A stretch of 53,680 nucleotides of DNA from Perkinsus chesapeaki ATCC PRA-425 (taxonomy: Eukaryota > Protista > Perkinsozoa). The position numbers and the translations under genes are program-made. This document shows, piece by piece, positions 8,201 through 46,221 of the stretch. The stretch lies in NCBI GenBank assembly GCA_013115145.1, contig JAAPAO010000199.1, positions 1 through 53,680 of the forward strand. The letters are read 5' to 3'. Under the pieces are notes generated by a model. It was not told the origin of the DNA. It worked only from the letters and a program-made list of their open reading frames with translations, and searched no databases. Position 1 is the first letter of the stretch; every line of letters begins with the position of its first letter.

Positions 8201-11200
8201 GTCCACACGGATATCTTGAACCGCGAGGTGGAAGTCCCTGAAAGTATCTTAGCTTGAAGCACGCCTTTGACAGCTGAGAAAGATACCTATGATTATGTCG
8301 TATACTAGCAACTCCTTCAATGCCGATGATTCCTGCAAATAGCAGTTCACTTCGAGGTCGCCCACGAACCGCTGCCACCAAAGATACGCCGACCCCCTTG
8401 AATTCAGCACGGTATCTAACGACCACCACAATTTGGCTAATTTCCCCCGAGTTCGAAAGAAAAGCGTGCGCCCTACACTGAGTCCACCGCCCTATCTCGA
8501 CGGCTGTCATCACTCAACGGTCCCTGGGCTGCTGTGCGTGAGCTCGGTCTGATTGGCCCAGACGGCAAAGCCAACCGAGCTGCCCCAGTGCCGACAGAAC
8601 TGCAAGAGAGAAGTAACCAACACGCCAAATGGTGCTTCTTACTCATTATAGAATATGAATACCTTTGTCGGGCCACTGCTGGTAACTTTATAACGTAGCT
8701 TCTGTTGTCTGCCTCTCAGTGGTGCCATCATAGTCCCAGAATGTTCGAAAGCTGGTACAGTAAGACCACCACCACTCTGGGCCGAGGCTCTGGTGGCCGA
8801 CTGGGCTTGACTTGTCGTTTGATCCGGGATAAAGTCGACTATTGTACCTTACCAGAGGGAAGTGCTAGGAAAGTCCACCGAGAGCGAGATGCAGCTATCT
8901 GAGGCGATCGCCAAGCCCTGAATGTCGAACGGTAAATGCAATAATTTTTTGAACTCAGAAAGTAGACCACTATAATCGAACAGCCCACATCCACTCGACT
9001 CTAAGACATCCGAATAACATCGTACGACGACTTTTAACTACACACAGCAAATACCATCACCGAGGAGTTCAACTGGCACCAGAGTTGCGTGAAGCTCACA
9101 CGGCGATATCCAGACACTATCGGGCACTGGCATCAACCACTTGGCAAGAAAAATAAAAATAGTTACTAGGTAGTCTGTGGAAATCCCGTTTGACGCATAG
9201 GGGCCGCATTCTCGTATTTGGTGGCTACACTGTACGCTGCTAAGACAATGATATCTTACTTCTCTTTGATGCCGGATCAAGCAGTATCTCCAACTTCTTT
9301 GGTTTCGTCGGTTCGTACCAAGCAAACGGTGTGGTGGAGTGCCTCAGTAATGGTATAAAGTAGGCCTAAGAGAACCAACTTCCTTGCAGATACGCTCCAC
9401 ATCAGCGAAAATCTTTATAGTGCGGAGTCCATTAACTCGCTCTTCCTTCAATTCAGCTTACCCTAGTGTGAGCTTGTCTTATCCACATCGACACATCTGA
9501 ATTGTTCCTCACCGAATAGCTCGCTATGTTGTATTCTTCCGCGCAAAACACCACGAACACGCAGCTCCTATACGGTCGAACATCCACCCGAATGTTCATG
9601 AACATTCCTGAAAAATGACACGTCCCGACAGCAACCTTCGAAGCGTACCCTCAGTCTCTTGGAAGACCTGGCAGACAGAATCGCCAACGACACGGTCAAC
9701 AGCCAGTTGTCCAGACCTGCCAGGAAAAAGGTCGCAGGTTCGACCCGCAGCGAGGGCATCTCACCATCCCCATCCAGTATCCTTGAGTCTAACTTGTAGC
9801 ATTTTTGGTAAGTCAACTTGCCACCACTTGAAGCTCATCTGCTGCTCTGGTTCAAGCTCAAGAGCCGAGCTCGAGGGAGAGTCCTGATCCCGATAAATTT
9901 GCCAAATTAGTTTGATAACATTTCCTACAGCTTGCTTAATCATGATCCACCGATCCTTCATTGAGTTCACAACTACATACCTCGGTGTGACATGGACGCA
10001 GCGGACGGATAGATCCCTGAGGAGATAAGCTGTGATGATGATGAGAGCCAACAAGGATGTGGACAGTTTGGAAATACTCATGTGAACTTCTGATAGACTT
10101 CCTCCTCATGAAGAGTAGATACTTTAATTTTATCAAAATGAACGATGTAAAATCGAAAAGTTCAAAAACGAAACTGAATTTTAGCATTCAATAGCTGGAG
10201 AACTGACGAAGACTGGCCTTCTAAAGCCGCCGACTACTCACCGGACATCGCCAGATGTGACAACCCTAACCCCAAGCTCCTGTCGCTTGCGTGCTTCATT
10301 GCGCTCATCGCCGCTCTGGACTATCTCACCACCATAGTCGGATATAGGCAGCCGGCTGCTGGCAGTTGGCTGATGACCGACCCCATAGCTTCCGTTTTCC
10401 ACGGCAATAGCGCTGGTGAAGCCAACAGTGTCGATGGAGAAGGGCCTGAGAGAGGAAGATAACATAACCATGTGATAATGAGACCGACGAGGAGAGCACG
10501 CTTAACTGGATTCAAGTTGTTGAAGAATATACAAATCTTGCCGATGCGCAAAAATACTAAATGAGCTCCAGTAATGCCTCCCAACGAGTTTTCAAAAGCT
10601 GATTGAAGTGGCTAAATCACTAGACACTATTAAATCTCTATTATGTTAACGAATAGAGCATAGTCCTACAAACAGTAAAACTGTGCGTTCGTAATGACCA
10701 GTATTCTTTTAAGAACCTACAGAGCTACTGACGGCAAATACGTTTACGACATCGCTGTCATTTCAAGAGGAAGTGCGGTACACTCCCGCTCACCTGCTGC
10801 AGGTATTATTAAGATAGGCTGCCAACTTAGTGCCATAACAGTCCAATGGCAATACCACTCCCGCCTTGACCGCTTCAGGATCGCTGGATGAGGGTCTGGC
10901 TCCCCAGTGAGCGATCCATCTAGGAGCTTGGAAGGCTTCGTCTGGTTGCTCACCATCATCAGTTTTCTCTTCGTAGGCATATCTCAAATATGGCTGAGGG
11001 ACCGTCGACATCAACCAGTACCTGAGTCAGTCTAGACTTAATGAAAAGTTTCAATATCATAATTACAATGACTAGTAAATTATCAATCATAAAAACAAGG
11101 ATACAGTACAGTTCAGAACGGAGCCGTCCTCTTGTCCAAGATAAAGCAGCAGACAATATTCTTAAAAAACGAACATGCAAATAATAATAACTAAGCCCTA

Positions 11201-14200
11201 ATCTGTTATAAAAAGATTTGTATGATCGACAGTTTATCATCATTGTCGATCTTTCATACAAATATTTTATACATTTAATTATCGTACGCATCACCATGAT
11301 ACCACATATGTCAAAAATAATAAACAGGCAAATGCCACTCGATGAATCTACTATTGATTTCTATTTCTTAACGCGCCAGTGAGAGCAGCTTGATCCTGCT
11401 AAAGGCTCAAGACTTCCTCCATCACATGCCCCCCTACGGTGTGTGCAATATCAAATCTAACGGTTGTGTCGGCCGTGACACAATCAACAATAGCAGTCGT
11501 AATGGATTCCGATGCTCATCATGGAGGGTTAGAGTGATGGAAGCGTAGTAGCATTCGTTCATAGGCTCGCTTGGAGGCTTATCCTCAGTGCTCGCCTAAA
11601 AGACAATCAAAATCGCAAAACAAAAATCGCTTCGCTCCGCTAACCTCAACGTTCTCTGCCATTTTCCTTGCGTTTTTTCCTGCTTTAACCACAGCCAGAT
11701 CCGCCGGCCAAATGACTTGAGGATCAGACCAAACATTCCCAAAGGCACACAGTCTCAATTCGAGGCGCGCGCCAAGATGAACAGAATGTAACTGACACAA
11801 GAAGCACGCAGCAACCTAAGATTCCAACTCTTTTTCCAGATTTCTCAACTTACATGTTCCTGACAATTAAGCGTTAGTGTTCCCGTAGATGAGTATGATG
11901 GTGGTGCTATCGGCAAAGGATGGCCTGGCCTCACCGGCACCACCTCAGAGGTGCAGGTGAGGTGGTAATCGACCGGAATAGGAAGAGTTGATCTAACAAA
12001 AGTAGTGCAGAATGAGGAGGACCTCTGTAGGGAAGTACCTTATTTTAACGGGACAGTTGAGAGTTATTATTATTTGTTTTGCTCCTTGGTCTCTATAATG
12101 GTAATGTCGCACTCCACAGGAAATGTACATGAATACTTCTTTATGAAGTCGGCCAAGGGAGCATCTCAAAGGGTAAAGCCGACTATTAGTTGGGCCCAAC
12201 GCTGGCGATGATGCTAGGCAACTGAAAGTGACATCCGTACGGCACCAGCTTCAAGAGTTTCGTAACAAATTTTTGAAAAACAGGATTATAGAGGATAATT
12301 AGCTCTTCAGCATTGTTATGATCATATGCTTATATCCAATAATATATTATTAAAGACTAAGCTCTTCGGTTACACACTGGAAGGAAGGGAGAGTGCCGAG
12401 TGGCGAGGCATTATCGATATAAGTGCAGAGACAGACTTAACTTGAAGAGGGTAACATACGTATTGAATTTAAGAATCCCGACAGTCCCGGAAGACCAACG
12501 ATACTGGAAGGATAACAGAAACTGAGGCATTTTTGCGGTAGTGAAGTCTGCGTTGAAGCTGCGCTCATTAATCGCCTCCTGCAATCAGCCTTTTACAACT
12601 AATACAAGCTTCACCGTTCCCTCCCTTTTCATATGCCTAACGACGCTCCTCCTCTTACCGATTGAAGAGCTCGATCAAAGACACTTCATTGCTGAATGGA
12701 TTATCCAACGCTTCGGACTCCTCTTCCGTGGTATCATCCAGCGGTCTGAAGCTAAGCTTCGGAGGAGCTGCAAGGTGAGTACTGCAATCAACTGGGAAGT
12801 GACTTCACCTTGGTGATCTCCCCGCTGCTGCGGCCATTCGCCCGGCTTGTCGGTCAACATCCTCTGTGCACACAAAGCCAGCGGGACAGCGGCAACACCC
12901 TCCACCGGAACAGTAGCCACACTGTGAAAGGAATGAACACTGGTATGAGCCAGTGATGATGATACCTTTCCATCTCCTCTCCGGGGCGCGTGACTCTTAA
13001 CTGAACTGGGGTGCCATAGCTATTCTTGACCAAGACCGCCGACATCACTACCAACATCTGAAACAAGCGGACGCAAACCCATCGTTCTTTTAGATCACAG
13101 CCCTACAAGCAATGGCGAGGGGAGCTAAAATCAACAAGTAGGACTGAAGAGTGTACGACTTTGATCATGGAACGTAATAGAAGAGTGGCCCGAATTCCAA
13201 GCTCGAAGAAGAATAGAGATAATCTCAACCGAGTTTGGATTCCATCCATCCGCAACAGGTGTGAGATGGAGGAATACATTCCTTCGCAAGGAGATAAAAT
13301 AGAGAGGAAATCTCACAAGTAGATTGAAGCGGATATCATTCTCAAAGTAGGATTGAACCGTGGGGGACTTTAATCAGAAAGCTCTCGTCGATCTCGTCGA
13401 ACATAACCCTCCTCCACCTTACCTTCCGACCATCCTCAGTAGCTGTGACTTCGCAGATTATAGCAGTCCCACCACTCCTAACCCCGCCGGAGATCGGCAC
13501 CGATCCTTGAGGACGCAATACGGAACGTGTAGTGCCGTAGGAGTAGGACCTGTCTCACAAAGCTTCAACAACTTCACTCTTCCTCCCCCTCCCACTCACC
13601 TCGAACTCGCTCGCCCACCAACAGGCTCGATAATGGCATATGGCTCAAAGCCCACCACATCATTAACCGTGCCATCATCGACGTAATAAAGGTACTTACC
13701 TGATACGATCTGACGGAAATACGGTATTAACTATTATACCTTTCCTATCCAACGGTATCTTATCCTGCTCCCATCCATCACCCTGTATGCTCACAAATGC
13801 CCTATCCTTCGCCATTCTAGCATTATTAGTGGCCACATGTATGCTGATCTCCGTCAACCTTCGCTCCTCACCAACCCCAATCTTCACAGGCACCGATGAT
13901 TCCCTCGATCGACCGCCATGGTCATGAGCCTCCCACGTCACCAGCAACGGCGACCCGCTCAAATTCCTTATACTATACGGGGCGTACTGCAACTTATCCG
14001 CTGCCTCCCCTCGTCCACTTAGCGGTTTTTTATCATTCCAAACCCGAGTGAATTCATTCATATTCTGCTTCAGTGCCCTCAGGAACGCCTGGCTGATGTT
14101 AACCATCAACAGCTGGTGAGTAGCTTCGACTGACAAATCATTCTTCTCACTCGCCCGTCCACCTTGGACCACCCCTATCCTCTTCTGCTTCACCAATACT

Positions 14201-17200
14201 TTATACATGCTTAAGCTTTCGTCGATTGTCCCGTTCTTTCCAGGATCAGCGGATTCGCTCTCCAAAAGAGGCTCCCAAGCCACCGCCACCGGATTGAAGA
14301 ACTGCGATGCGATTTCAGCATTAATAGCATTTGTGGCTCGCTGGGTGACCAGCACGCCATGACCTGGGCCCACCCTCCGGCCACGGCGTCGAGATGACAC
14401 ACTACCGCTCCTCGGTGAATCATTGTCGAGGACGACACTATCGATTTCATCGAGGCTAAAGGGACTTCCTGTACTGCCGCCGTTATGCGTCATTTGGCAG
14501 TTTGCTATGAGAATATTCACAAACGGTGTGTTCGTCGTCCGACCAGAATCATTTACCAGTGTCAAATTGATCCGATGGAAGACCAAATCAAAGTCTGCCC
14601 GATGGACCGTACACACTTCATCAACTGGCTTTGGAGTTGCTGTGCTCGACGATGGTGACACATCACTGACCATGTCACCAGACTGGTCCTCATCTTTCCC
14701 TCCGCTGCCATCAGTCAAGGCCTCCTCCTCTTCCTCCCCACCTGACGCATACTTCATCAGCAACTCGTAGCTTGCCATTATTTGCATTATGTCAGAGTAG
14801 CTAACGTTGATATGAAGTGGCTCGAAATTCAAATGGATCGATTTGTTCTCGGTGATGAGTTTGTCAGATTCATAATCAGTCTCAATCAAGACGCTCACGA
14901 AAGCATCACAATCGTTCACAATTGCCCTCGCCTGCCCGCCAACCCCATCCGACCCCACCGTGATTGCGCTTGACTCAGATATCGGAGAAGTGGCCGCCAC
15001 CTCACGCCTCTTCCACTCTTTCTCCAATCGATTGAGAGTATCGAAATCGTTGGTAGTAAAAAGCGTTCCGTTATGCAGAGTCACCTTGGTGTTCATCGAC
15101 CCTGCTGTCGGCCCCCGGCTCGGAGAGGAGGTCCGTTCAACTTGGCAAACAACTGTTCCCCTCGTCACGAGCAGTCTCGAATCTGGTTCCTCCGTCGCCG
15201 GTAAGATGATGCTCGAGTCTATCAGGTTTGCTGTCACCACCATACTAGAATCATTTGCCTCCTGATTCGCACCATCGCTCTTTTGAAGGGTACTAGTATC
15301 ATCTTCGATAGCATCGCCGCCCACGGCGACGGAGGCGGCGCTCCTCGGTGGTGGAGGAGGGAGGGGTGTTAAAGGTATCCTGAAATATACAAACCTCTGC
15401 GGTGGTGGTGGTGGGACAACAAAACGAAAGTCTGGGCATTCTCCCTAGTGTGACTGCTGCTATGCCAGGACAACGATCATCAATACCATACTATACCGTA
15501 CGAAACCGATTGAATTGCCAACACCTATTATGTTATCGTTCGGATAATATTATCCAAGTTAAGGCTGTTATGAGCAAGATACCCTGTGGAGCTTCTATGG
15601 CTCATGACTCTCTCAGGAGGATGGGTCCTGCTGCATTATCACCGGCATGAGGATGAGGACGAGTAGTTGGTGAACGATTATTTCACATTATAACGTTTAA
15701 ATATATTTCTATAATAATCATTTACATACAATAAATTATATAATTGTCAATGTAAACGAACCCATACAAGCTCTATAATCCTAACCTCTATACCTCCCCC
15801 CTCCTCCACATTCACCTACTCTTCATCTTGGCTCATAACGCCACCATAATCTTCATCATCATCCAAGGAGTAATAGCCCGACGAATCCACACTTTCACCG
15901 TCCCCAATCTCCGAGCTATTAGCTGTAAACATCCTCTCCAGCGGCCGATCAGTCTCCGTAGGGATGTCAGCCACCAAAGGGATGTCATCACGACTCGTAT
16001 CACCGGAAACAGATGGTATAAACTGCGCCCAAATATATTGCCAGACTCTCTGGACCGCGCGCCGCAAAATCCATACTCGCACCCCAGACAAGTCCACCTT
16101 AACGCCCATGTTGTGACCAGGGAACTCCTGGCTCGGATCGTCCGGAGAATAGGTTTTCAGTTCAAGCACGAAGATGTACTCGTCACCCGGCCTTAGACTC
16201 AGCAAGGGCAACGACGCTCCTCGACCACTTGGTGGCAGATATGTAAAAGTTAGGTTGCCGATCTTAACGTGGAGTCTCATACCATAACTCCGCATGCTCA
16301 GGTTTACACTACTATGTGTCATCTCGCTGCAGGCGAACGGCCCGTCCTTCTCAGAGTTCTCCTCAAACCATTCGACCGACATAGCAGACCACACAAAAAC
16401 CAATCGCCAGTCGGCATAGGTATCTCCATCGGGGGTGTAGACAAGGGAGGGTGGGGCTGTTGCCTTCCCAGTAGGTACCAATGTAGAGTAATCACTAGCC
16501 GAACTTTTGGTATCATCCAACAGGTCCCCAGCAGCAGCAGCGGTTGGCAGGTCATTAACGGGCATGTTCCGGATGAAGCCAACCAACGCACGCCAAAGCT
16601 TCGGGCGGAAGAACGCCTTGACAGCGCCGAGCTTGAAGTTAAAAAGCATCTTAGATTTCTGTCCCTTTTCATCCATAGCGATTTTTCTATCAGAAATGAA
16701 CACTGTTATATCCACCAGCTCCTCCGCCGTGTCGCTCATCAACATCTCATCAGGGCCGTTCATTATGCTCAGAGCCTTCAGTCCAAATGACAGCTTCGTG
16801 TACATATGATGGACCTTCACCATCGCCGATATAGCACTCGCTGTCAAATCAATCGTCGACCCTTCAATGCAGCTGATACTCACCATCGTATTCGAAATAG
16901 ACAGCTCAACCGACACAAAACTGGCCCAGTTGAGTTGCTCCTCCTCACCAATCGAAGATGACTTATCCTTCTTATGTGAACTATCTTGAATGCCCTCCTC
17001 AGCCGGTAACACGAAATTAAGACCCGTGGACTGCCCCGGTTGGTGCCCCGTCACGCGCCCCAGATTTGGTATTTTCTTTCCCCCGGGAGATTGCCCAGCA
17101 CCCGGTTGCCCCCCGGCAGCAGCTGAGGGACTCGATAACAGCAACCGCATCGCACGAACCAAGGCGTGATACTTATTAACATCCAAAGATATTTTTAGAG

Positions 17201-20200
17201 GTTGATTGATGTCACCCCTGAGCCGCACTCTTGTCGGTGCCGGGACCAGCATACCACTTTCCGCGTTGTCATCGATACTAAGTGGCTTTGATATGATAAA
17301 CACCCTCATTGCCAAATCCATATTATCTAGAATGGACCCCTGCCGGCCACCCGACCTCAGCAGCTCCGCTCGCACGCCTGTCATACCGATTCTCCAGACA
17401 TCAACTGTTGGATTGGTAAGTCCTTTCTCCCGCCCGCAAACCTCCGCAACCTCCCCTTTAAGATTTACTTCTTGCATATCCTTCCGAGTGAGTGAACAGA
17501 GAGCGAATGTGCCGAGATTGAGGCTGATGTAAATGCCCGAGTTATACGTGTGGACAGGGAGCAATACCGTAGGGGCCGCGATCCTTACCTGATCACAGAA
17601 AGACAACATGCTTCTACTATTAATAACTACAACAAGGAGTTTGACAGATCGTTACGAAGAATTAGGTGTTTTGTGGAGGGGTTTGAAATATATCCTCGCT
17701 TTATATACACAAGATGATAATAGAAACGATTGGTGATCGGAATTCCCGATCGGAATGATCGGAATCGCTATTGTCAAGAATTGTGTATACGAAACTGGAT
17801 GACACCGACATTATACCTTAACATATTTCTTTCCACACACTTCTATTCGACCTTAAGATACCCGAACCAATCCAAACACTCACTTTAACTTTTAATTTCC
17901 TATCATCCGGTTTAACCAAGGACCTCAGCCCTGCCGCCGTTCCTCCAACCAACTGTTGCTGCATTGCTATCAGCTTATCCCACTGTCTCACACCTTCCCA
18001 CCAAGACGCCTTATTCGCCGCGACCGCCGGGACGGTCGCCTTGTCCGTAGTCGAGCCCATCACCAGTAGCTCAGCAAGGAGAGTCCTATCGTATAGGATA
18101 GCTAACTTCGCCGCTGTCAGAACTGCTTCTTTTGGGTTTAATACGAGGCTCAATAGATCTCCCTCCTCGTCGACACCATCCGTATCTTCTCCCGAACTTT
18201 CCCGTTTTAGTATGTCGTACTAAGGAAATGAAAAATACAGATTTTCAAACCGACAATGAAGCCTGTCAATGTGACTACGGAATGAGACTGAGTCTACTGG
18301 AGCAACAGTGATATACGAAAGAGACAGAAAGCGACACAATGCTATGGAGCAAAACATCTGCTTGTGAACTACACGGAAATTTTTAAGCATATATTTTTTC
18401 CTCCTAACCTTCAGTGAAGACCACGTGTATAGGAGACTAAGTGGATGTGTAAATATATTATTGATAAAAGCCATACAACACCAGGCCACTCTATAGCTCG
18501 AATCTCGGAGCCTGGACCAGAGAGCGATCAAATAACTTTTTTCACAAAAGTGTAATAATTCCACTCTCCATGATAGCTCTTCATCCTTCAGTTGGGATAA
18601 AACGCTACATTTCCGACTCGATGAGATTTCACGAACCACATAAGATACACCCGGCATCAACGGCCACAACAACAGTCTTACCAATCTTCCATTCTTCTTC
18701 GCAATAACATCTGCATTCCCCAAACTCGCCTTAAGCCTGTAATCTGTACCGGATACCGTACATGTGATAGAAACATCGTGGAGGCTGCCGAGGCTATAAA
18801 CACTTCGACTTGGCTCCAGACGAACACTTGCGAGCCGCATGTAGAGGGAGATGGTTATCGACTCTGATTCCGGTACCAACAAGCTTGATACCAACGCAGA
18901 GTAGGACTCTGAAAAATATATCAATAACCAAATATATACGACAACATATCATACCGAATATTAACACATGGAAGGGAATGGCGAGGCATGCTGACTCTGT
19001 CCGACTGCGAGAATAGTTTTCCCATTTTTCTATCAAATTTGACAATTTTTATTTCCTCTGTTAAAATTCCCGTTAAGGCTCTCTCTACCCCCGAGGGACA
19101 CTTAAACAGATTAATCTAAACTTGAGCTACGCAGACTGTGACCAGCAGTAATGCTAGTTTTATCGGGAATCCTCAGATACCACTACCCAAAGGAACCAGT
19201 GAAGTTCCTATCAATATTTCATATCGATTCGATGCCGAAGAAGCTTAGGTATATACTGTCACCACCACCATGGAGACACCCATCACCACCCTCAGCTCAC
19301 CTTGTGTTCGTTTACCATCATCATCACCAATACTCTTCTTCGATGCATCATCAACTTCTTGTGGTTTAACTCCCCAAAACCAGGCCACCCATCCTTGACC
19401 TGATCACATCTGATTTCGTGGCGCGTGAAATATAAACAACACATCAATGCTCATGACGCGGAGTAAATCCCTATCGGGCCAATTACTCACCTTGAGCCGC
19501 CTTAGTTTGCCTCGCTTCTCGAGCCAGCCGAGCTCCGACAACCTGAATAAAAACTGTCCAGAAAAATACGTAAAAGATACGCCGAATTTTGATAATAATG
19601 AAAAAATTAAAAAATAGTAAATAAGATAATAAAACTATTATCATAAAATCGATAAACAGGGCAAATTAAAACACGGTCAATCATCACTATCAAAAGTAAA
19701 CAATAGCACTATAAAATGCCTTACACACCAACTGCCATTTTTTCGTCATACTTTTCCAGATATTTAGTTTTAAACAGTTAACCGCTAGTTCCCGTAGCTG
19801 TTGCCATCACTGACCTAGACTACTTCTCTCACAAAAGCGCACTACACAATTTATGTAACATAAAATCCCTCCGCATCCACCTCCTCACCTGCATTCTCCA
19901 TCTCACCAAGTCCTCTGACTTCATTGCCACTTCTAGGTCATCTTCCCTATCCTCCACAGGGTTAATGCATGTCGACAATGGTCCAATAGGGCTGATTGCT
20001 CCTACATGTGGCTCGGACGGGGCCGGCAGAAGACAACCAAAGACTTCATTTTCTAAGAGATAAGACAACGTGCGGTTAAAGGTTAAATGAGATCTACAAG
20101 CGCCCAAACAACGCCGACGCTTCGAGTGTGGAAGGAGGAATGAGGTTCATTGATAACCGCGTCGTGAATATGGCAACTAAATGAATATAAACTTGCTATA

Positions 20201-23200
20201 ATAAATCATATTATTTTTCGTCAACAGCTCAGCGCAATAGACCTCGCGAGCACCAGTATAAACTAGATAGACCAGCCCGGTATAGTCCCAGAAACGCGTT
20301 CGGGTGCTCCCCTCGATTAGAGGGTTCACAGTAGTGGTGCGGAACTGCCGCCGCGGCGGTAGCATACATTTTAAGCATAATCTCCATCATCTATATAATG
20401 GTATGATATTAAAGCTTGAAAGCCGATAACTATTCATTATTATTCAAAGTCCCTACCAACATGTTACAACTACGTACGGTCATCTCCACCTCAAATCCAA
20501 TGCTTCTCATTACCATTATATTCTTCAACTGACTTTTCCTCTTCACTATCATCATCATCCTCCTCAATACTATCCTCCTCAGATGAGCTGCTGTTGCTTC
20601 GCTCCGCCGTACCACCGATACTTCTTTTTTTATTTTTCCTTTCAATCCTATGAAGCGTCGCCTTATATTTTCTCTGCTGCACCAACCGCATCAAATTCTC
20701 ATCAGTAAATACCTCCCCCAGCAACCTTACAAAGATGCATCCAATCCGACCTTAAAAATATCTTTACTTTGGCATGCCACTCTCCTGTCCAAGCTCCCTT
20801 CTAGTTTGCCGTATATCCCTCACCACACAGCCCACTGCATATCTCCACATCATCCTCGCGGTCCCTAACCCGCGCAGGTTCGATCCCCGGGCCCGGCATT
20901 ATTACTCTCAGGATGTCCCTCTTCCCTTAAAGGTCGCCATGGCCACACATATCTCACTCTCCTCTCAATAGCGCTCCGATAGGCATTGTAATCCGAAAAC
21001 AAAGAAGCAGTCCGCAGAATACCGGCATATCTAAAACCGTAAAACATGAATCGCTTCGCTCCGCCCTCCTCTTACTGTGATTTCGTCATCCTCATAGACA
21101 CAGCGTCCAGTGCTCCAGTGAGCTGGATTTTCGGTACGAAGTTCGGATCGTCTGGAGGCAGCTTCTTCGCCACCGGAGTTCGTATCATCCTCAGCGAACC
21201 GGACACGGGCTCTATCTGACACGCTAACCATCGAACGACCCGGGTTCGAACCCCGCATGTGGTACTATATAATTTTTATCCTCCCCGCTTTCCCCATCTT
21301 CATATTCCTCATCGTCATCAAAGCTAGTAAAGCTGCTGGTATCAAATGATACTCGTGAGGAGGTGCCCCGCGATCGGGCCGGTGTCTCTCCTTGAGGGGT
21401 ATCTTTGGTCTTCAATAACATAAATGGATTCCAGTAAGCCCCAAGCCGCTCTAGACGAACCAACTTATACCTACTCAGGAACAATAATATGCTGACTAAT
21501 TCAACATCGCCGTGGGAGCTTCTTCCTATTAATACCGTCACTCTACAGGAACCTTTTAAACTTCATTTCCCTTTTATTCGATGTGGAGCTATCAACCCGA
21601 CTACACCTATCCATCCACAGTGGGGGTTCCCCGCCGCTAATGTTGCACTCAAATATACATTCAAAACTTGTCGACCTTCTTCTCGCAAGGTTCCCCTCAA
21701 TTTCTCTCCTCCTCAGTTTTCCCCCATCTCTACTACATCCTTGTATCATCCTTCCTACTATCCCCTACAACCTGATGACCATTTGATGATGATGCCTTCC
21801 TATCAACAAAGACTGGTGTCCAAGATGAGTCTGTTGTTGTCATAGTAAAGCCTTGTAATGTTATACCACAAGCACCACCTAAATAATAGCAACAACATCC
21901 ATACCGCTCCCTCCGCTAACATTTAATATTCCTTGCACGTAGGTATGTATAAGTATCTTTTATTCGGGATTAATATTACTACCGTTTCACCGGACGAGGG
22001 TTGTATAGTATTAATGAGACATCCCCACATAAACTGGGGAATCTCAGCGAGGATTAGAACCCGCGACCTTCCGAACGACAGCCCACCATCCTATCCAACT
22101 GACCTGTTGTATGCTCCGCATTACTGTAGGCGTATCTTATATGTATATTAGACACTCTCAGTTCGACATTATCTGCCATTTTACGACATATCGAAGCGAT
22201 GTACCTTGAAAAAGGCCAACATTTGTATACATTCCACGGCCGGCAAATTTTGAATTTGAATCTCCTATTCATACGAGCGCTCATCGCCTCATGACTGCGT
22301 CCGTAGACGCTCCTTCACAGAACCAGCGCCAACCAGTCGGCCGCTGATAGATATAGCGGACTTCCTCGCACGTTAAGTAAAATGAAGTTTAGGGAAGTCC
22401 CGGACTACCTGGACTCACGGGCGATGTTATGTGAGACGCATATTAGAGAATATACCAGAAAAAAATAGGAAAAATTTCCGAACAATCATCCACCCAAATC
22501 CAGAAGTCCTATGTGTCTCCAGACTTAGAGTATTCGATCCGACTTGATGACGACTGAAGGCTCATCACAGACCGGTACGATGTTATTGATCCATCGCCCC
22601 CCTTGCCACCGCCGCCCAATTAACTAATACCCTTCTCTCTCTGGTTTATCCTTTTTATCATCTTTCCTTTTATTATTGTTTTGTTGTTCTTCCTCTTCTT
22701 CAAACACTTCTTGTTGAGCCATAACCTCACATTGCATATCCACCGCTGTGGCAAGCTTCTTACGAGAAGCTTTTAATCGAGAAACTTCGTACCTGGACAG
22801 GATCAGCTGGAATGATGGAAGTCTGATGGAAAAGGTAATATATCATCTCTACAGTGCTATAGATGATAATGTAGAACGTAATATTGATAAATACAATACG
22901 CCGACCGTGAGTTGATTCTACACACTTGTATATGGGAATCACTGCGCATCAAACCGCACTGTGAAATTTCAATAGCATCATCCGCGGCAGAGCACTCGGT
23001 GGTGGTGGTGAACAATAACTACCAAGGATATTGGTTATTGTATATTAGACACTGCTGTAGATATAACTACACTTTCCGATGATAAATGAACATCATAGTA
23101 ACTATTGTAAATATTAACGATGTATAACAATCTGGTGATATATCCCCCACTCACTCCTGACTCCATTCCTCTCTCTTTTTAGGTTCGACAACTAAATAAA

Positions 23201-24502: not shown

Positions 24503-27500
24503 ATGCCATCAAACGAAACTGTTAAGGACGAAAAAACAATAAGTAGATACCTGTGGACCGCATCTAGTAAAGGCTGTTATTAGGAACCAATTGCATCAAC
24601 TGTGGAGTATCTTTGTTAAAAACCGAAGGGCATATTCGTTGTAAAGGAAAAGACTACTGTGGGACTTGCTACGTTGCAGCCGGTAAGAAAGTGGAGGTAC
24701 CGGGGATCGAACCAGGGTCCTCAGAAACACTACGAGAGCAGCCTTACTCCATCATACCACCTCTGACGTTCACACTTGAAAAAGGTGAGTTTCACGAGAC
24801 GTATCGATTACATATCTCTCGCAGATGAAGAGAACAATATATGGAGTGTGGCAGATACATTGGCACTACTTGACGCGGTGGCAAAGGTAAGGAGGGGTCC
24901 AGGGATACAGGAAATACAGCTGTTATAGTTAACATGTTATATGTACAGCTATTATTATAATATATATAATAACAATATGCAATATACTAATATGTAGTTT
25001 TATTAGTCTGCTTGGAAATGCAATCAGTCTGCTGCTGAAAAATACAAGTCATTTTGGTAAGTATAGATGTGAAAATTCGTCCAGCGAGAGATTGAGTCTT
25101 CAACTCCAGTGTAAAATAGTTCCCTTAAAGATTCTTTTTAAGGTCGGTGTTGGTTCTTGGGATGAAGTATTAAGAAGGATGCATCAAGCCGGAGCAGCGT
25201 TGCCGCCGAGTTCAATTGACCCTCCACAATGTCGATCGAGATTCATGTCACTGTGAGTCAGGCCTCGTTGGTGGCAGCATGGAATGACTTATAGGTGTTT
25301 TCGCCCAGGGAAAGTTTACTCGGAAAATCTTTGGCCCACCCGAAATATCTCTCGGCCTTCCTCGCTTGGAGCTGTAAAATACCTTCACCGAATTGTCGTA
25401 GCTTATCGGGAGTTTCAGGGAACTATCGTTTAGCCTTCGTATAGATCGGTGATTATCTTTGAAGAGTAAGTGATGCTGGTGGTAGGTATTCGACGTGGAT
25501 AGCAACTTGTTCGGCGGAGAAGTCTGACGTGGATGACACTATATCGAGCCAGGTTATGGATGGCGAGCATTGTGCTGTTATGAACCCTATGGCTGACCAT
25601 GATGGACCAGTAAGTATTCATACCGCTCTCTCCGCTAAGTTGTGATGTTTGTATGGGGTGCCTGTATATGGGAGAGATTGTTGTATATAGTAAAAATAGG
25701 ATCTTTTTGAGGGTGGTCCCCACGAGGGTTGATTAAGGAGACACGAGGAAAACCTATGGTGCTCCCAGAAGAAGCGTATCTCTGGCGTGAAGCAGCAGCA
25801 GCAAATACTGAATGATAAAATGGTGGATGATAAAAAGTGATGGCTTAATAGTAGCTTAATATGGCGGTTGCTGCCCCTTGATGGTCGCGTAAATACCACC
25901 GCTTATCTTATAAATAACATATCTTAGGCCTATGAAATCGAAACAACTTGAGGAATTGCCAATTTTCAAGAAGTCACTTTTTAATGCCGTGAAAGCTATA
26001 TTTCCCCAGAGGTTCATTTACTCATGAGCTTTTGATACAGTAATGCATCCATCACTATCAACATTTGTATTAATTTTAGCGGCGTGAGGTGCTGCTATGA
26101 GTGATGCTTCGAAGCTCGAAGCTAGGATATTATGACATGAATCATTTGTATGACTCCTACTATCATTAGTCACCACCATCATCACTATCATCATCGCCAT
26201 TGGTTCATGAAAATCTGAATTATCGATGATGTTGATAGTGCATGATAATATTTTGTGGAACCCGGACCTCTTGAATAGAATGCTGTTATCATTCCTTGTT
26301 TGGTCTATTTACCACTTAATATGACAAGATTGAATCTATTAAGGTGATGAGGAGGAGATAACAACAGCTGAAAAGATAATCTACCTTTAACCGAAGCCAA
26401 TACTTGAGTCACTCACAAGACTTTGGGATCTACGCTGTGGTCAGGTTGTCGATACGGTGTTGGGGAAACGCAAGCGGAGCGATGCTTCGACGGGAAATGA
26501 TTCTGATAAGTAGTATTGTTAAGTTGCTGTCTATTTGTAAGTTATAACTTAAGATTTATACTTGGTTACACTCCCCGTAGAGGGGACTTCGAGGTTGATT
26601 ATGACGATTGTGCGGAACTGTTGCTTGCGGACATGGAGTTCCAACCGGAGGAGCGGAAAGAGGATGAAAAAGTTAAAGTTGGTAGGCAAGGTTGAGTCAT
26701 GGTTTGGAGCTCACTTTTTGCCGAGAGAGCAATTTTCTCCGGTCTAAAACCGCGCGTGTTAATTCGGTGATCGATTTGAGGAATGAAGCAACTGCAATTG
26801 GAACTGGAAGCCCCCCAGTTCATCAAGAAAGCCACCGGAATCTCTTGGAAAAAAACGAAATTTTCCCTATGTTTTAACGTTTCTACCTCAGATGTGCTCC
26901 TTGCCTATAATGCACGGCTGTCGCTACGAGAACAGATGAAGCGTTACGTGGTTCGACGTGAAATGGTGATGCAGAAGCCTCCACCGGTGGCCATGAATCC
27001 GAGGTCGGGAGGAGTACCCCCCATGCCCCCTGTTAACGCTAACACTCGAGCAGGTGAGATGATTGATGTTCGGTGAAGATGGAAGTTGGTCAAGTTGTAG
27101 GTCAAATATTAAATCGATTATTCCGACCAGTGGAAAGATTCTTCAACTCTAATGAAGACTGTGATGAGTTCAAACAGGTAAGATATTTTATATAGTGCGC
27201 AATATGATATCTTCTACTCGGTTACTCTGGGCAAGTTAATGAACTCGGTGGTCTTTCCGACGGATTTCAAATCCCTCGGCAAATCCCGTTCCCCAAAAAT
27301 TTAGTGCATTGAATCCCATTCCAGCCCCGTCTCCGGCCACCTGTGAAAGATAACGTGTGACTGCCGTCACAGTTTAACTTGTCAACTGGTCTTCACCGTG
27401 GTAGTTTTCGAATGGAATTATTCATCACCTACTACCTGTCAGTGTTAAGGTGGCGTATTGTGTTTAACGTAGTCGTGCTTTCTGTATTGTTTCGTTTTTC

Positions 27501-30780: not shown

Positions 30781-30990
30781 GTTACCTTTATTATGTCTAT
30801 GTGTATGGATGTTACCTTTATTATGTCTATGTGTATGCATGTTATCTTTATTATGTCTATGTGTATGGATGTTACCTTTATTATGTCTATGTGTATGGAT
30901 GCTATCTTTATTATGTTTATGTGTATGGATGCTATCTTTATTATGTCTATGTGTATGGATGCTATCTTCATTATGTCTATGTGTATGGAT
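30781..30990. repeat. 30-bp minisatellite, 7 copies, 3' flank of paralog A
   Basis: G(T/C)TA(C/T)CTTTATTATGTCTATGTGTATGGAT units at 30-nt period. Confidence 0.95.
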
Positions 30991-33375: not shown

Positions 33376-33435
33376 TGATGCACGGGCTTTACTGATTAGC
33401 CGTGATTAATATATATTAACATCAGTCTTATTAAT

Positions 33436-33495
33436 GTTACCTTTATTATGTCTATATGTATGGATGCTATCTTTATTATGTCTATGTGTATGGAT
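33436..33495. repeat. Same 30-bp minisatellite, 2 copies, 3' flank of paralog B
   Basis: Two units followed by 59 nt identical to 30991-31049. Confidence 0.95.
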
Positions 33496-38807: not shown

Positions 38808-38891
38808 CGCTCAGTCTGGTTTGGTCCAAACCAGACTGAGCGTTACCAAACCAAAGTTAGTAATCCAAACCGTTTGGATTACTAACTTTGG
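38808..38891. other. Two adjacent perfect inverted repeats (17-bp and 20-bp arms, 1-nt centres)
   Basis: CGCTCAGTCTGGTTTGG-T-CCAAACCAGACTGAGCG (38808-38842) and CCAAAGTTAGTAATCCAAAC-C-GTTTGGATTACTAACTTTGG (38851-38891). Confidence 0.95.
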
Positions 38892-39040
38892 AATAACTAA
38901 GTTTCGATCGCTATGGAAGTGAAGAGATAGTCCTTTGCGTATGTTTACGGCTCATGAGTATTGGACAATCTACGAGGTCTCCTCGGCTATAGTGCGGTTT
39001 GCGTAGTGCATGCATTATACAGTGTAGATGACACTTCCAA

Positions 39041-40733
39041 ATGGTGTGGGCAAAACCGGGGAGGACTTCTCCTTCAAAGTTGCAGAAAAATGATTATTCT
39101 CAAACACAATCGGGGAACATTCTTCTTCACTTGTCAGTGCCTTCTTGTGATAGTCGATTATGTTTAGTTTTTTATTTTTATTACCTTGTTTCAGAAGGGG
39201 ACGCTGATGGACGAACTCAAGGCACATGGTAAGAATATTAAAGACCACATCTTAAGGCCGACACCTGAGCAAGTGAAGGGGGCAGCTACTTATAGTGGTG
39301 GTGACACGGGTGGTGACACGAATGATGATGTGGCTGCCGATGAAGTTGACAAGACTGGAGGCCATGAAGTCGAAGAATCTGGCGGGAGCGAGAAGAGTCA
39401 AGTTGGAGATGATGCTAATGAAGATAAGGAAAATAAAAACAATGGAAATAAGAAAGCAAAAAAGAATAAGAAAAACAAAGGACCTAAACAACAACAACAA
39501 CAACCGAAACAGCCGAAACAACCGAAACAACCGAAACAACCGAAGCCCCCCAAAAAAGAGGTAGGAAGTCCTTCAGCTTCCACTTGTAATCGTTTTTCTT
39601 ATTTGCGAGAGCGAAAGGGGTTAATCGGCGTATCACTGTCATGTCCTCCTTGCAATTGTCTTTATAACAGGAATCACTCAACAGGCTTATCTTGTCATAA
39701 CTTTTGCTACCGGCACTATAACAGTTTCAGCATTGAAAAGTGTGATGACACTGCGAGGAAAATAAGATTAGTGTTAGGAACAGCGCCGGTTGGTTGTGTA
39801 ATTGGCGGAGTAGTGCAGTAAGGTAGCCGCAGTTGCTTTCTCGGAATGATATATAATGATTTGGGAGTGTTGATGGCATTGATCATCACTCTTGAGCATT
39901 TGACTGCGTGAACTTGTCAGGTCGGTGAGAGTGGTGGAGGGAAAGATGAGGCGAAGGTGAGTGGGAAAAAGCTGGTTGATGATTGATTTCTTTTCTAGGT
40001 TAAGGAAAAGCCTCATGATAGGCAGCCAGGGAAAGTACCGTTTTTGGAGGTATCTTAGGTTCATGCTCGGTTCTCAGGGCGATGTTAATGATGACGATGA
40101 TGAGGACGTCGGTGCGGAATATGAACGTGGGGAAGAGGTAAGTTTACTCTAACGTTATTACCCACTTTATGCTACTCTAACGTTATTACCCACTTTATGC
40201 TACTCTAACGTTATTACCCACTTTATGCTACTCTAACGTTATTAACCACTTTATGCTACTCTAACGTTATTAACCACTTTATGCTACTCTTNNNNNNNNN
40301 NNNNNNNNNNNNNNNNNNNNNNNNNNNNNNNNNNNNNNNNNNNNNNNNNNNNNNNNNNNNNNNNNNNNNNNNNNNNNNNNNNNNNNNNNNCCACTTTATG
40401 CTACTCTAACGTTATTAACCACTTTATGCTACTCTAACGTTATTAACCACTTTATGCTACTCTTACGTTATTAACCACTTTATGCTACTCTAACGTTATT
40501 AACCACTTTATGCTACTCTACCGTTATTAACCACTTTATGCTACTCTACCGTTATTAACCACTTTATGCTACTCTAACGTTATTAACCACTTTATGCTAC
40601 TCTACCGTTATTAACCACTTTATGCTACTCTTACGTTATTAACCACTTTATTCAGGGCCTGCCAAGCATGTTCGGTGACGCTAAGGTCAAGACGGACTCA
40701 GATGGAGATCTTGTTTTTACTTTTGATGATTAA
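39041..40733 (+). CDS. Low-complexity hypothetical protein with QPK repeats and acidic tail, multi-exon
   Basis: Exons KGTLMDELKAH...(QPK)n..PPKKE, GDVNDDDDEDVGAEYERGEE and GLPSMFGDAKVKTDSDGDLVFTFDD-stop. Start uncertain. Confidence 0.55.
40146..40650. repeat. 28-bp intronic minisatellite spanning a 99-N assembly gap (40292-40390)
   Basis: CTACTCTAACGTTATTA(A/C)CCACTTTATG units fill intron 40138-40655 from donor to acceptor. Confidence 0.95.
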
Positions 40734-40865
40734 TCCCTCTTTATTTCACTTTAACACTTTAACAAACTTTATCTAATCGCATCTTTACGTGTTCGCTGTT
40801 ATTTCCGCTGTGTCGAGTTTGTCACCATCATCATCGCTCCTCTGAAGTCTGTTGTTAACATTGTC

Positions 40866-42900: not shown

Positions 42901-43425
42901 GGCACGAAGGTGATGAGTTTCGTGAAGAAGGCTGAAGAAGTGAGTAGGGATGTGATTGTGCGAGATGAAAGATTCTTTTTAGGTCGGAATGCTGGCTTCT
43001 GCTTTCAGAAGGGCCGGTGATAGGAAGCCAGATGACACCTTCAAGGTGAGCTCTTCGGTTTGTAGAGAGAATTCGTTATCATAAAGCTATTGTCATGCTA
43101 CGTTTGAGTTCAAGGAGACACCTCAGCATCATTGTTCGCCAATTGTATAATGGTCGATGAGGTGATCTGAGAATACTATAACTCTGACCTGGGCAACATA
43201 GCTCCTAATCCCTGAGCGCGCCTGCTCGACTTTATTGACCTGTGAACTTCAATGCATTATTTAAAGTAATAAGAAGCATTGTGAATTAAGAGACTCAATT
43301 CCCAGTATTAGTGTTGCACTAAGAATCGCTATAATATAGTTAATACACTTGATGCCTCTAATACATAAGTGCAAACGTTATTCACAAGATTTTACGATGA
43401 GGCGATTGTGGGTTACTTCACGCAG

Positions 43426-43794
43426 ACCTATATGACGGTTCCCGCGAAAGCTCCGATGGCCAAGGAATTGATAGAGTTGAAGAGCACCCCAAAACGGGAA
43501 AAGGGACATGAATGCCACATATTGCCAGATGGCATCATTGATACCAAACTTTTCCCACGCAATCCGAATAGGATACAGGCCAAACCGGGAACGTGGAAGG
43601 AGGTCGATCATAAAGATGGGAAGACTACTCGCAGGTGACGCAACGTGAGTTAACTTGATCAGAAAGGGCTGGTTGTCAGGTTTAATGGTGTTGTTATTGT
43701 CACCTATGGCGAACATGTAGTGGAACAAGAAGTCCGCATTGATCTTGAGGGAAATGACCAGGAGCAGTTGGACCAATTAAGAAGGGTCCTGCTG
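43426..43794 (+). CDS. Beta-rich module split by one phase-2 intron
   Basis: TYMTVPAKAPMAKEL...ILPDGIIDTKLFP..AKPGTW, then FNGVIVTYG..EQEVRIDL..LRRVLL-GTGAGC. Confidence 0.7.
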
Positions 43795-43876
43795 GTGAGC
43801 TCTCGGAAGTGTAGAGATGCTTGAACATTTTTTATGCCAGACAAATGCGTATGCCACAAAGGATGACAATGACAAT

Positions 43877-43924
43877 GTAGGATGATACTAGCGGAGCGAA
43901 GCGTTTCATGTTTTACGTTTTCAG
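43877..43924 (+). repeat. Putative 48-nt intron carrying the GCGGAGCGAAGCG element
   Basis: GTAGGATGATACTAGCGGAGCGAAGCGTTTCATGTTTTACGTTTTCAG; 31/34 identity with the 3' end of VPS13 intron 21031-21075. Confidence 0.7.
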
Positions 43925-44401
43925 GTTGACTCGGAGGACACTGATAGAATGGTGGGCAGATAGACGTTAATGTGAATTTTATAGTGTGGATCAGAACACC
44001 TTGAGGGAACTACCAGGAGGGGTGCTGGATGAAGAGGAAGGGGGAGAGTCCGCAGTTGTTAAAGGGCATAATAGCGATATTATTAATGATGGGCATGAAG
44101 AGATAAGGGATCATTCAACAACAATAGTAAGCGCCACTGTGAGGTATCTTCCACATGCTTTGCGATGTCCTATAGGACCCAGCCTACTGTACAAATCTAA
44201 TAGGTTTATTAGGAGTCGTTCTTCTACAGTAGGGGCATACTACTATGGGCCCGCAGTTATGATTAACTATACCGTAAATGCTTTTTCATGGACTAGTGTA
44301 ACACAAGCCGTGTCATAGTTCAGCCGTTCAGGAGGACTCTATCTTTGTAATGTTCGGGCTGAAGTCTGTCTCAAAAATGATATTGGTTAGTTTTCGGGTT
44401 T

Positions 44402-44845
44402 GTGTTCTGTGTAGACTGCGCACTATTTAGTCATCGTTCATTAGAATCGGAGGAAAGCGGCGCCCATTCACTTGTGGCGACAATTCAGGCAAGAGAGGAG
44501 TTGGCTGAGGATGAAGATGGAAATGAAGATGATGATGATACGACAATCACAGTGCTGCAGGGTGACACGGAGGAGCTCACCGATGAAGAGAAGGAGGTTG
44601 TGCTAGATCCAGAAGAAGAAGAAGAAAAAGTAAGAATGAGAAATTTGGAGAGACGACGAATCCCCATCAGCCGCAGTGTGAAGTTAAAGCTGACGGGGCA
44701 TCATGCCAAATGACGAGTCAGAGGGACGAAGAGATGGTTGAAGAGAAGGATGATGAAGGCCTCGGACCAGATCTGGATATCGACGAGACGTTTCAAGACG
44801 ACGAACAAGAACCAGTGAAGGCAAGCTGGCTGACAAGCTGAGTAG
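44402..44845 (+). CDS. Acidic low-complexity coding exons, probably the C-terminus of the 43.4 kb gene
   Basis: EELAEDEDGNEDDDD...DPEEEEEK then GTAAGA; further acidic exon to about 44820. Confidence 0.45.
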
Positions 44846-44878
44846 ATTATTGATTCAACACACTTTCAGCTACCCATA

Positions 44879-46221
44879 ATGAAGACAGGAAATAAAGGAG
44901 AACATAAAGTAACAGATGCTCTTGCTGGGGATCGAACCGGGCTTCCCGTTACGACCGTGCTTCATGACTTGGCAGCTTTGAATTGAACACTCATGAGACT
45001 ATCACGCTCGTGTATAGGAGAAAAATGCGAAAACGGAGGAAATGCGGATCGGTCGCTCTTCCAGTCGCGGAATCCTCGAAGGCTACCAGAAAGTATTACT
45101 AATTCGAAAACTTTCATAGCGAACTGGTTCCTAAAATACCATTCCCTCTGGGAACGGTCGGTGTCCCTTCATGTGGATTTGATCATGGTTTAGATTACTA
45201 TTATCATACCAAAGGACGCATACATCCCCACTGAGCTCCGGTACCACGGTGACGTCCCTCTCATCAATGATAATGTGGGAGCTAAACTGATGAAAAACGG
45301 TGACTTGAAGTGCAAAAAATTGTGGAAGAAAAGCAAGAGCAAGCCGACGAGAGTGAACGTGAAAGGCGGAAATTGGATGGTTGTCGGAAATGTGGCGAGC
45401 GGATCTATCATGGTCGATTTCGCGCATATCGAGAAGACTTACGCAATTGAAGCCCAGATCAAGTTCAAAAAGGAGGACAGATATGACAGTCTTCCGCAAG
45501 ACGTTCTTGCTATACTAGGGGTGAGACGATGAGAGGAAAGTGCGGTATGAGATACTCGTCCAGGTTACCGAATTGGATTCATTCCCCGACCTTGACGACA
45601 GGTATTCGGGGAAGCTGTATAATGTACCTTGCCAGCCATGCGCGGATTGCAATTGTAGAGTTTTGGTAGGTTATGATGGAGCTCGACCTTCACCAGAGAA
45701 TCCCTAAGATTCTCACCGACAAGAGAATGGACCCCCACGCTCACCGAGGGGCAATTCTGAGGGAAGATGGTTTGATTGAAACCCACCTGTTTCCGAAGAC
45801 GGACGGCAAAAACAGTCAACTGGTGTATCCGGAAGTAAAGAGTATTGAGGGAACTTGGACCTACCAAGGAAGCCGAGCAAAAGGCAAAGTTCAAGTCCAC
45901 TATGGCGACGCACAACCTTTGGTCGATGTGGAGCTGCAGTTCGCTAATGATGAAGTACCAGATGATGCTATTGCCTTTTTGGGGGTAAGATGAAATTCTC
46001 ACGCGCCAGGAAACTGCCATGCTGTTCAGATGGAGAAGAAAACGTTCCTGCAGCGAGCAGCTCGGAAGACAGATGAGGTAGGATACTTCAAAGGTCGATT
46101 CGGGCGCCAATTTTCCTTCTCAGGTATTAGGGATTCGCAAAGTAATGACGCCGTGGATAAAGGCCGCCGTCGCCGTAGTTGGTTCTCTTTAGCCTCCACC
46201 GCCTCGAGTGCTTGGTATTGA
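44879..46221 (+). CDS. Protein with two tandem beta-rich modules (45194-45520 and 45670-45984)
   Basis: First exon MKTGNKGEHK; both modules are phase 0-0 and join in frame through the linker exon VTELDSFPDLDDRYSGKLYN. Confidence 0.6.
44917..44945 (-). pseudogene. tRNA T-arm/acceptor fragment 8 nt inside a putative first intron, antisense
   Basis: GCCCGGTTCGATCCCCAGCAAGAGCA; A73 at 44917, donor GT at 44909. Only the B-box is well kept. Confidence 0.45.

What the first reader, a model, noticed from the sequence alone, without database searches (positions are those of the whole stretch)
9717..44945. Antisense tRNA 3' halves anchored at 5' splice sites: possible tRNA-derived intron formation
Seen: five introns in three unrelated genes (VPS13 9717-9764, 20865-20905, 21216-21265; ADA2 24683-24824; putative intron from 44909) contain, antisense, a T-arm B-box GGTTCGA(T/A/C)CC. 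Counting from T54, position 73 is A in all five and lies 0-9 nt from the donor GT. Three of these introns (41, 48, 50 nt) are little more than the tRNA fragment, and splicing them restores VPS13 motifs. A weaker sixth case is 19455-19490. The flanks differ, suggesting several source tRNAs rather than one SINE. Known: the reverse complement of A73-CCA is TGGT, which supplies a G|GT donor. Inference: tRNA cDNA or tRNA-SINE insertions were tolerated by becoming, or docking at, introns; alternatively tRNA fragments could pair with these pre-mRNAs.
Basis: partly seen in the sequence, partly recalled or inferred. Interest (0 to 1): 0.8.

Follow-up and report, generated by a model that had tools for sequence, protein, structure and literature searches.

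The report
tRNA promoter relics inside tiny introns
Five short introns in this stretch of a Perkinsus (shellfish parasite) genome each carry, on the opposite strand, a worn-down tail of a tRNA gene; only its 10-14-letter promoter core (the B box) is still perfect, so that core is probably still used, and this matters as a possible new link between tRNA genes and introns.

Summary
The B-box core GGTTCGA(H)CC occurs at 5 places in 53.7 kb (0.27 expected). Each lies inside a GT-AG intron, or a putative one at 44909. Four are clearly antisense to the host gene and one is palindromic. The base at tRNA position 73 is A in all five and lies next to the donor site.

Splicing is supported by homologue alignment at two VPS13 introns, and by reading frame at the others. 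The sixth case (19455-19490) fails. "ADA2" was not confirmed.

The relics come from tRNA genes, not from mature tRNA copies: no CCA follows A73. They are not one SINE or introner family: they share only 11-14 nt, have no A box and no target-site duplications.

The flanks have decayed (6 of 15 outer T-stem pairs, which is chance level). The core is all-or-none: one-mismatch variants occur at background frequency. This argues for selection on the core, most likely as a TFIIIC docking site.

That tRNA insertion created these introns is neither shown nor excluded. I could not retrieve orthologues from other Perkinsus species.

The scan has already reported this phenomenon several times on other DNA of this genome. 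I found no paper describing it.

The parts
9717..9764 (-). 48-nt GT-AG intron of VPS13 (site 1). On the + strand it holds a tRNA-sense relic: variable loop AGGTC, B box 9737-9746, A73 at 9758.
   Evidence: (junction GW|SG aligns to KWSG of P0003).
20865..20905 (-). 41-nt GT-AG intron of VPS13 (site 2). B box 20877-20886 on the + strand, A73 at 20898, trailer TTATT up to the donor.
   Evidence: one intron with acceptable splice scores versus a two-intron alternative with a poor acceptor. No homologue support.
21216..21265 (-). 50-nt GT-AG intron of VPS13 (site 3). Palindromic core GGTTCGAACC at 21243-21252. The donor GT is the complement of A73-C74.
   Evidence: (YI|IEPVSGS aligns to YVLEPVSGS of P0004).
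24683..24824 (+). Intron of the neighbouring zinc-finger gene (site 4).
24692..24764 (-). Degenerate, nearly full-length tRNA-like relic. Acceptor stem 6 of 7 Watson-Crick pairs, T arm 4 of 5, B box 24704-24713, A73 at 24692, trailer CTTTCTTAC running into the donor.
   Evidence: tRNA-like domain of the tmRNA model, 13.8 bits, E=0.15 over the whole window; ARAGORN at the 80% threshold only; acceptor pairing p about 0.06.
44909..45017 (+). Putative 109-nt intron of the repeat-module gene (site 5). B box 44929-44938 on the minus strand, A73 at 44917.
   Evidence: The unspliced frame stops at 44984-44986; the acceptor at 45017 gives 33 open codons; the upstream exon is only 39 nt.

Best explanation
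These are ordinary spliceosomal GT-AG introns of a Perkinsus species. Their interior is the decayed 3' part of a tRNA gene lying antisense to the host gene. It is a gene copy with its 3' trailer, not a copy of a mature CCA-tailed tRNA.

The cloverleaf, the A box and the stems are gone. A 10-14-nt block around the B box (tRNA positions 50-63) is letter-perfect. I infer that this block is kept by selection at the DNA level. The most likely reader is TFIIIC, the B-box-binding factor of RNA polymerase III. The relics would then act like 'extra TFIIIC' sites placed inside gene bodies, where introns are almost the only non-coding space.

Shown here: the motif excess, the intron location, the gene-type (non-CCA) 3' end, the decayed flanks, and the absence of near-miss variants.

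Inferred: Not decided: whether the tRNA piece founded the intron or entered an existing one.
For: - Core excess: 6 matches vs 0.26-0.27 expected.
- All five lie in introns or a putative intron, while my rough model puts about 39% of the window in introns.
- tRNA hallmarks predicted in advance by tRNA biology: A at position 73 in 5 of 5; AGGTC or AGGAC at positions 44-48 in two elements; an acceptor stem at site 4.
- No CCA after A73.
- Decay outside the core: 6 of 15 outer T-stem pairs (chance 0.375), which implies at least about 0.26 substitutions per site if the stems were once paired.
- At that divergence, 5 intact cores predict 16 or more one-mismatch relics. Observed: 9, against a background of 8.5 +/- 3.2.
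- A box not enriched.
- The copies share only 11-14 nt.
- The intron RNAs show no excess structure, z from -1.0 to +0.45, which favours a DNA-level reader.
- Earlier scan notes on other DNA of this genome report the same relics and cross-species retention of the B box. These are leads I did not test.
Against: - Only five sites.
- The Rfam tRNA model finds nothing at four of them, even in tiny search spaces, so their tRNA ancestry rests on a few positions.
- The acceptor pairing at site 4 is only p about 0.06.
- The selection argument assumes the source T stems were fully paired.
- No orthologous sequence, no TFIIIC data and no expression data were available.
- A DNA-level reader does not explain an antisense bias, if that bias is real (4 clear cases of 4, two-sided p=0.125).
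Confidence: 0.5

Rival explanations
1. Neutral debris. Perkinsus carries very many tRNA genes and pseudogenes. Copies that land in introns survive because introns are the main non-coding space. The intact B boxes are simply the youngest fragments and have no function.
For: P. marinus is reported to have more than 500 copies of just five tRNA types, and transposons that target tRNA genes (PMC3706591). All five sites are in non-coding DNA. Five sites is a small sample.
Against: There is no halo of near-miss B boxes, although the T stems next to the core are at chance pairing. The copies share nothing outside the core, so they are not young copies of one source.
Confidence: 0.2
2. Intron birth from RNA polymerase III gene ends. 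A tRNA gene fragment, or a 5'-truncated copy of a primary pre-tRNA transcript with its U-rich trailer, inserted antisense into an exon. It was tolerated because its T-rich trailer reads GTAA/GTGA plus an A-rich run on the mRNA strand and so supplies the donor. The element end therefore sits at the 5' splice site. This is compatible with later selection on the B box.
For: A73 lies within 7 nt of the donor GT at all five. That includes the two long introns, where chance placement is roughly 1 in 10 each. The trailers TTATTAC, CTTTCTTAC, TCTGTTAC and TCTCAC are the reverse complements of the donors. Three introns are barely longer than the relic.
Against: No target-site duplications and no protosplice consensus at the junctions (read). 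In 41-50-nt introns the position carries almost no information. Intron age is unknown. No second copy of any element exists in the window.
Confidence: 0.17
3. RNA-level element. The mRNA-strand motif GG(N)TCGAACC, 17-25 nt from the 5' splice site, is a splicing signal of mini-introns, or it pairs with tRNAs or tRNA fragments. On this reading its likeness to the B box is secondary.
For: The motif shows a consistent strand (4 clear antisense, 0 clear sense). TCGAAC starts at intron positions 17-25 in all five. A second, unrelated motif family also recurs in mini-introns of this window.
Against: About 130 predicted introns of similar size lack the motif, so it is not needed for splicing. The intron RNAs show no excess structure. 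A73 and the AGGTC variable loop are tRNA features with no meaning under this reading.
Confidence: 0.08
4. Chance or an artefact of composition.
For: None beyond the small sample.
Against: 0 of 100 and 0 of 200 dinucleotide-preserving shuffles reach the observed count.
Confidence: 0.01

Closest known systems
Extra-TFIIIC (ETC) sites of yeasts and mammals, and tDNA or B-box insulators
   Same: An isolated, well-conserved B box with no A box and no functional polymerase III gene. The proposed role is docking of TFIIIC on DNA.
   Different: Known ETC sites are mostly intergenic or at promoters. They are not described as relics that fill 41-50-nt spliceosomal introns. TFIIIC binding is untested here.
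tRNA-derived SINEs in introns (for example MIR and B2; compare antisense Alu supplying splice sites)
   Same: tRNA-related sequence with a B box inside introns, and an antisense element end lying at a splice site.
   Different: No A box, no shared SINE body or tail, no target-site duplication, and the copies are unrelated outside 11-14 nt.
Introners (transposon-derived intron families of Micromonas, fungi, dinoflagellates and Amoebophrya)
   Same: Short introns in unrelated genes that share sequence, in a lineage next to dinoflagellates, where introners abound (PMC7789003; Roy et al. 2023 as cited in PMC13685798).
   Different: Introner copies are near-identical over their whole length and carry terminal repeats and target-site duplications. 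Here only the B-box core is shared.
Primer-binding sites of LTR retrotransposons (antisense tRNA 3' ends)
   Same: Sequence complementary to the 3' part of a tRNA.
   Different: A primer-binding site starts with TGG, the complement of CCA. None of the five has it.

Membership tests
Functional tRNA gene | Cloverleaf found by a tRNA finder or covariance model | tested here: not met
   ARAGORN at default settings finds none. Rfam gives no tRNA hit at four sites. Site 4 is found only at a relaxed threshold.
Functional tRNA gene | A box TRGCNNAGTGG upstream of the B box | tested here: not met
   No exact match. With up to 1 mismatch, 23 matches vs 16.7 +/- 4.3, and none lies next to the sites.
Functional tRNA gene | B box GGTTCGANNCC | tested here: met
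   Five loci, about 20-fold excess.
tRNA-derived SINE | Copies share a body or tail beyond the tRNA head and have target-site duplications | tested here: not met
   Longest shared stretch is 14 nt. No flanking direct repeats seen.
Introner | Many near-identical full-length copies with terminal repeats and target-site duplications that carry the splice sites | tested here: not met
   Only the window could be searched, not the genome.
Extra-TFIIIC (ETC) site | Conserved B box without a polymerase III gene | tested here: met
   (intact core, no A box, no tRNA).
Extra-TFIIIC (ETC) site | TFIIIC occupancy without polymerase III | not testable with these tools
   Needs ChIP or CUT&Tag in Perkinsus.
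Retro-copy of a mature tRNA, or an LTR primer-binding site | CCA after position 73 (TGG on the other strand) | tested here: not met
   TCT, TTA, CTA, CTT and TCT follow A73.
Spliceosomal GT-AG intron | GT..AG borders, and removal restores the frame and the homology | tested here: met
   for sites 1 and 3. Frame only for sites 2 and 4. Site 5 is putative. No transcript data.

The most novel reading that the evidence does not exclude
The terminator-proximal ends of RNA polymerase III genes or primary transcripts (tRNA tails here; possibly a second small-RNA tail in the other intron motif family of this window) seeded many Perkinsus mini-introns. Antisense, the T-rich trailer becomes the GTAA/GTGA donor. 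Sense, it would become the pyrimidine tract before the AG. The B box was then kept as a TFIIIC site inside gene bodies. This would be a new route of intron gain, coupled to co-option of a polymerase III promoter element.
Probability: 0.15. Interest if true: 0.85.

Novelty: new variant of a known kind. Interest (0 to 1): 0.6.

Why it matters
If the B box is truly held by selection inside mini-introns, Perkinsus would use relics of tRNA genes as a dispersed set of TFIIIC sites within gene bodies. That arrangement is not described for any eukaryote in the papers I could search.

If the relics also founded the introns, it would add a source of new introns distinct from transposon-type introners. 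It would do so in the sister lineage of dinoflagellates, where intron gain is already known to be very active.

Both ideas can be tested directly with existing Perkinsus genomes, RNA-seq and cultures.

Tried and rejected
Orthologues from other Perkinsus (all attempts failed):
- Homologue searches with the 597-aa VPS13 exon, with an N-terminal alignment, and with the exon next to site 1 gave no Perkinsus protein.
- The all-protein search returned only an 81-aa P. marinus fragment on a 1-kb contig, which has about 70% nucleotide identity to the window's exon.
- A metagenome scan found nothing.
- An exact look-up of an intronless window gene is not on record.
- P0003 and P0004 turned out to be intronless VPS13 genes of unknown metagenome protists, so they say nothing about intron age.

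Other checks that led nowhere:
- Rfam tRNA model on small windows: no hit at sites 1, 2, 3 and 5.
- Pfam and PDB searches could not confirm the exons flanking site 2, nor the ADA2 name.
- My own gene finder is rough. It over-calls long introns and reads site 2 as an exon, so I use it only for approximate intron counts and splice-score comparison.
- I tried to date the site 5 intron using the repeated modules of the site 5 gene. The modules are too diverged.

Rejected readings: one SINE family, introners, a primer-binding site or mature-tRNA cDNA, an RNA structure, and the sixth case at 19455-19490.
Full report
ORGANISM AND GENES

The window is intron-rich eukaryotic DNA. A 597-aa open reading frame (15819-17609, minus strand) has as its only close relative an 81-aa protein, at 75% identity. 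That protein is encoded on a 1-kb contig of Perkinsus marinus GCA_000006405.1. The contig matches the window at about 70% nucleotide identity inside the exon. The window therefore comes from a Perkinsus species well diverged from P. marinus. Earlier notes of this scan name it P. chesapeaki; I could not verify the species.

A VPS13 gene runs on the minus strand from 23790 to about 5800 or lower. Evidence: a Pfam VPS13_N hit on the first exon, and tblastn of the VPS13 homologues P0003 and P0004 along 23784-5822. An AP2-domain gene lies at 53209-53616.

The assembly gap at 40292-40390 lies inside a 28-nt minisatellite with the same unit on both sides. It is outside every feature discussed here, and nothing is read across it.

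THE OBSERVATION

- GGTTCGAHCC occurs at 5 loci (6 matches, one of them palindromic), against 0.27 expected. No shuffle reaches 6 (one search gives 6 vs 0.26).
- Removing 9717-9764, 20865-20905 and 21216-21265 reopens the VPS13 frame.
- The spliced peptides align across the junction to homologues at two sites. GW|SG aligns to KWSG of P0003. YI|IEPVSGS aligns to YVLEPVSGS of P0004.
- At 20865-20905 my gene finder preferred to read the B-box region as exon. That alternative needs two introns, one with a very poor acceptor (-4.8 bits), against one acceptable 41-nt intron.
- At 24683 the donor is shared by both models. The 142-nt intron joins a Cys-rich exon to an exon in the right phase. Pfam did not confirm a ZZ/ADA2 identity.
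- At 44909 the intron is putative. The unspliced frame stops after 25 codons, and the acceptor at 45017 gives 33 open codons.
- Position 73, counted from T54, is A at all five. It lies between -1 and 7 nt inside the donor GT.
- The proposed sixth case at 19455-19490 has no B box within 3 mismatches and does not end in AG.

ARE THEY tRNA-DERIVED?

ARAGORN finds no tRNA. The Rfam models find nothing at sites 1, 2, 3 and 5, even when only 81-431 bases are searched.

Site 4 is different:
- 24689-24761 (minus strand) matches the tRNA-like domain of the tmRNA model, in the same Rfam clan as tRNA, at 13.8 bits and E=0.15 for the whole-window search.
- ARAGORN calls a cloverleaf there at an 80% threshold.
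- A 7-mer at about the canonical distance pairs with positions 66-72 at 6 of 7 Watson-Crick pairs (empirical p about 0.06).

Across the five elements, an alignment shows invariant C50, G52-A58, C60, C61, C63 and A73, and nothing else. Two elements carry AGGTC or AGGAC at positions 44-48, which is the commonest variable loop of class I tRNAs (my own knowledge). A at the discriminator position and this loop are features predicted in advance by tRNA ancestry. They have no meaning for an unrelated motif. I therefore accept tRNA-gene ancestry as likely for all five and well supported for site 4.

WHAT KIND OF COPY?

- After A73 come TCT, TTA, CTA, CTT and TCT, never CCA. The source was gene-type DNA, or a primary transcript with its trailer. 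It was not a mature tRNA. These are also not primer-binding sites.
- The A box is not enriched.
- The five introns share only 11-14 nt with each other and with the rest of the window.
- I see no flanking direct repeats.

This rules out one SINE or introner family within the limits of a single window.

DECAY VERSUS CONSTRAINT

- The three outer T-stem pairs are formed in 6 of 15 cases, the chance level. If the sources had paired stems, this implies at least about 0.26 changes per site.
- At that level only about 4-7% of 9-letter cores would stay intact. Five intact cores should then be accompanied by 16 or more one-mismatch relics.
- Observed: 9 one-mismatch matches against 8.5 +/- 3.2 in shuffles, and 78 two-mismatch matches against 105 +/- 12.
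- The near-misses I inspected lie in coding-looking sequence.

The core is thus all-or-none. That is the pattern of purifying selection on the core, and it is not the pattern of neutral debris.

The intron RNAs fold no better than shuffles (z from -1.0 to +0.45). This speaks against a structured-RNA role and for a DNA-level or primary-sequence reader. The known high-affinity reader of this sequence is TFIIIC (established knowledge of polymerase III promoters and ETC sites). That step is inference.

POSITION AND STRAND

- Four elements are clearly antisense. The fifth is palindromic in its core. With so few sites the bias is not significant.
- In the 41-50-nt introns the relic fills the middle and its position carries no information.
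- In the two longer introns the tRNA 3' end sits 6-7 nt from the donor GT, which I estimate at roughly 1 in 10 by chance for each.
- The trailers TTATTAC, CTTTCTTAC, TCTGTTAC and TCTCAC are the reverse complements of the donors GTAATAA, GTAAGAAAG, GTAACAGA and GTGAGA.

A T-rich polymerase III trailer read antisense could therefore supply a donor. It is not demonstrated.

FREQUENCY

My rough gene finder predicts about 250 introns in the window, with a mode of 40-49 nt, covering about 39% of it. Published P. marinus introns are 39-1622 bp, mostly under 100 bp (PMC3101222). B-box introns are thus a few percent of introns here, which is lower than the fractions quoted in earlier scan notes for other pieces of the genome.

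PRIOR KNOWLEDGE

Searches of the paper library gave no description of tRNA-derived or B-box-bearing introns. The terms covered Perkinsus introns and tRNA, tRNA-derived intron gain and the B box, introners in Perkinsus, extra-TFIIIC sites in introns, and introners with SINE and tRNA.

Relevant background: P. marinus has unusually many tRNA genes, and Dada transposons that target them (PMC3706591). Introners are prominent in the related Amoebophrya and in dinoflagellates (PMC7789003; reference in PMC13685798).

The scan itself has already reported this phenomenon repeatedly on other DNA of the same genome, including claims of B-box conservation in P. olseni and P. marinus. I could not test those claims at these loci, because no orthologous DNA was retrievable.

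VERDICT

The best reading is antisense relics of tRNA genes inside ordinary mini-introns, with the B-box core under selection, probably as TFIIIC sites (confidence 0.5). Intron creation by the relics remains an open and attractive minority reading.

Noticed in passing
window 21031-21075 (-), 43877-43924 (+), about 11590-11650 (-), about 52330-52390 (+): A second mini-intron motif family, on the mRNA strand at the 3' end of the intron: (T)AGCGGAGCGAAGCG(A/T)TTCATGTTTTACG..TTTTAG. A 27-nt stretch is 96% identical between introns of two unrelated genes. From memory it resembles the 3' end of U6 snRNA, but that is untested, and Rfam gave no U6 hit.
   Followed up: partly
window 40145-40651: A 28-nt minisatellite (5 + 9 copies) interrupted by the assembly gap at 40292-40390. 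The same unit lies on both sides, and the copy number across the gap is unknown.
   Followed up: yes
window 21216-21265: The core at site 3 is a perfect 10-nt palindrome (GGTTCGAACC), so its strand is ambiguous. The mRNA strand also carries GATGGTTAGCG, which looks like a D-loop or A-box remnant.
   Followed up: partly
window 30786-30990 and 33441-33495: Tandem repeats with a 30-nt period. They recur at two places 2.5 kb apart and give Cys/Leu-rich repetitive reading frames.
   Followed up: no
window 2258-2362: Three tandem copies with a 46-nt spacing (shared 12-mers at 2259, 2305 and 2351), just downstream of a small Cys-rich open reading frame at 1938-2216.
   Followed up: no
window 53209-53616 (-): An open reading frame with an AP2 domain (Pfam E=2e-10), the transcription-factor type typical of alveolates.
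   Followed up: partly
L003:10001-17014 and L002:38-4756: The nearest full-length VPS13 relatives in the protein libraries sit on gene-dense metagenome contigs as single uninterrupted reading frames (2337 aa and 1572 aa). They belong to unknown protists that have no introns in this gene.
   Followed up: partly
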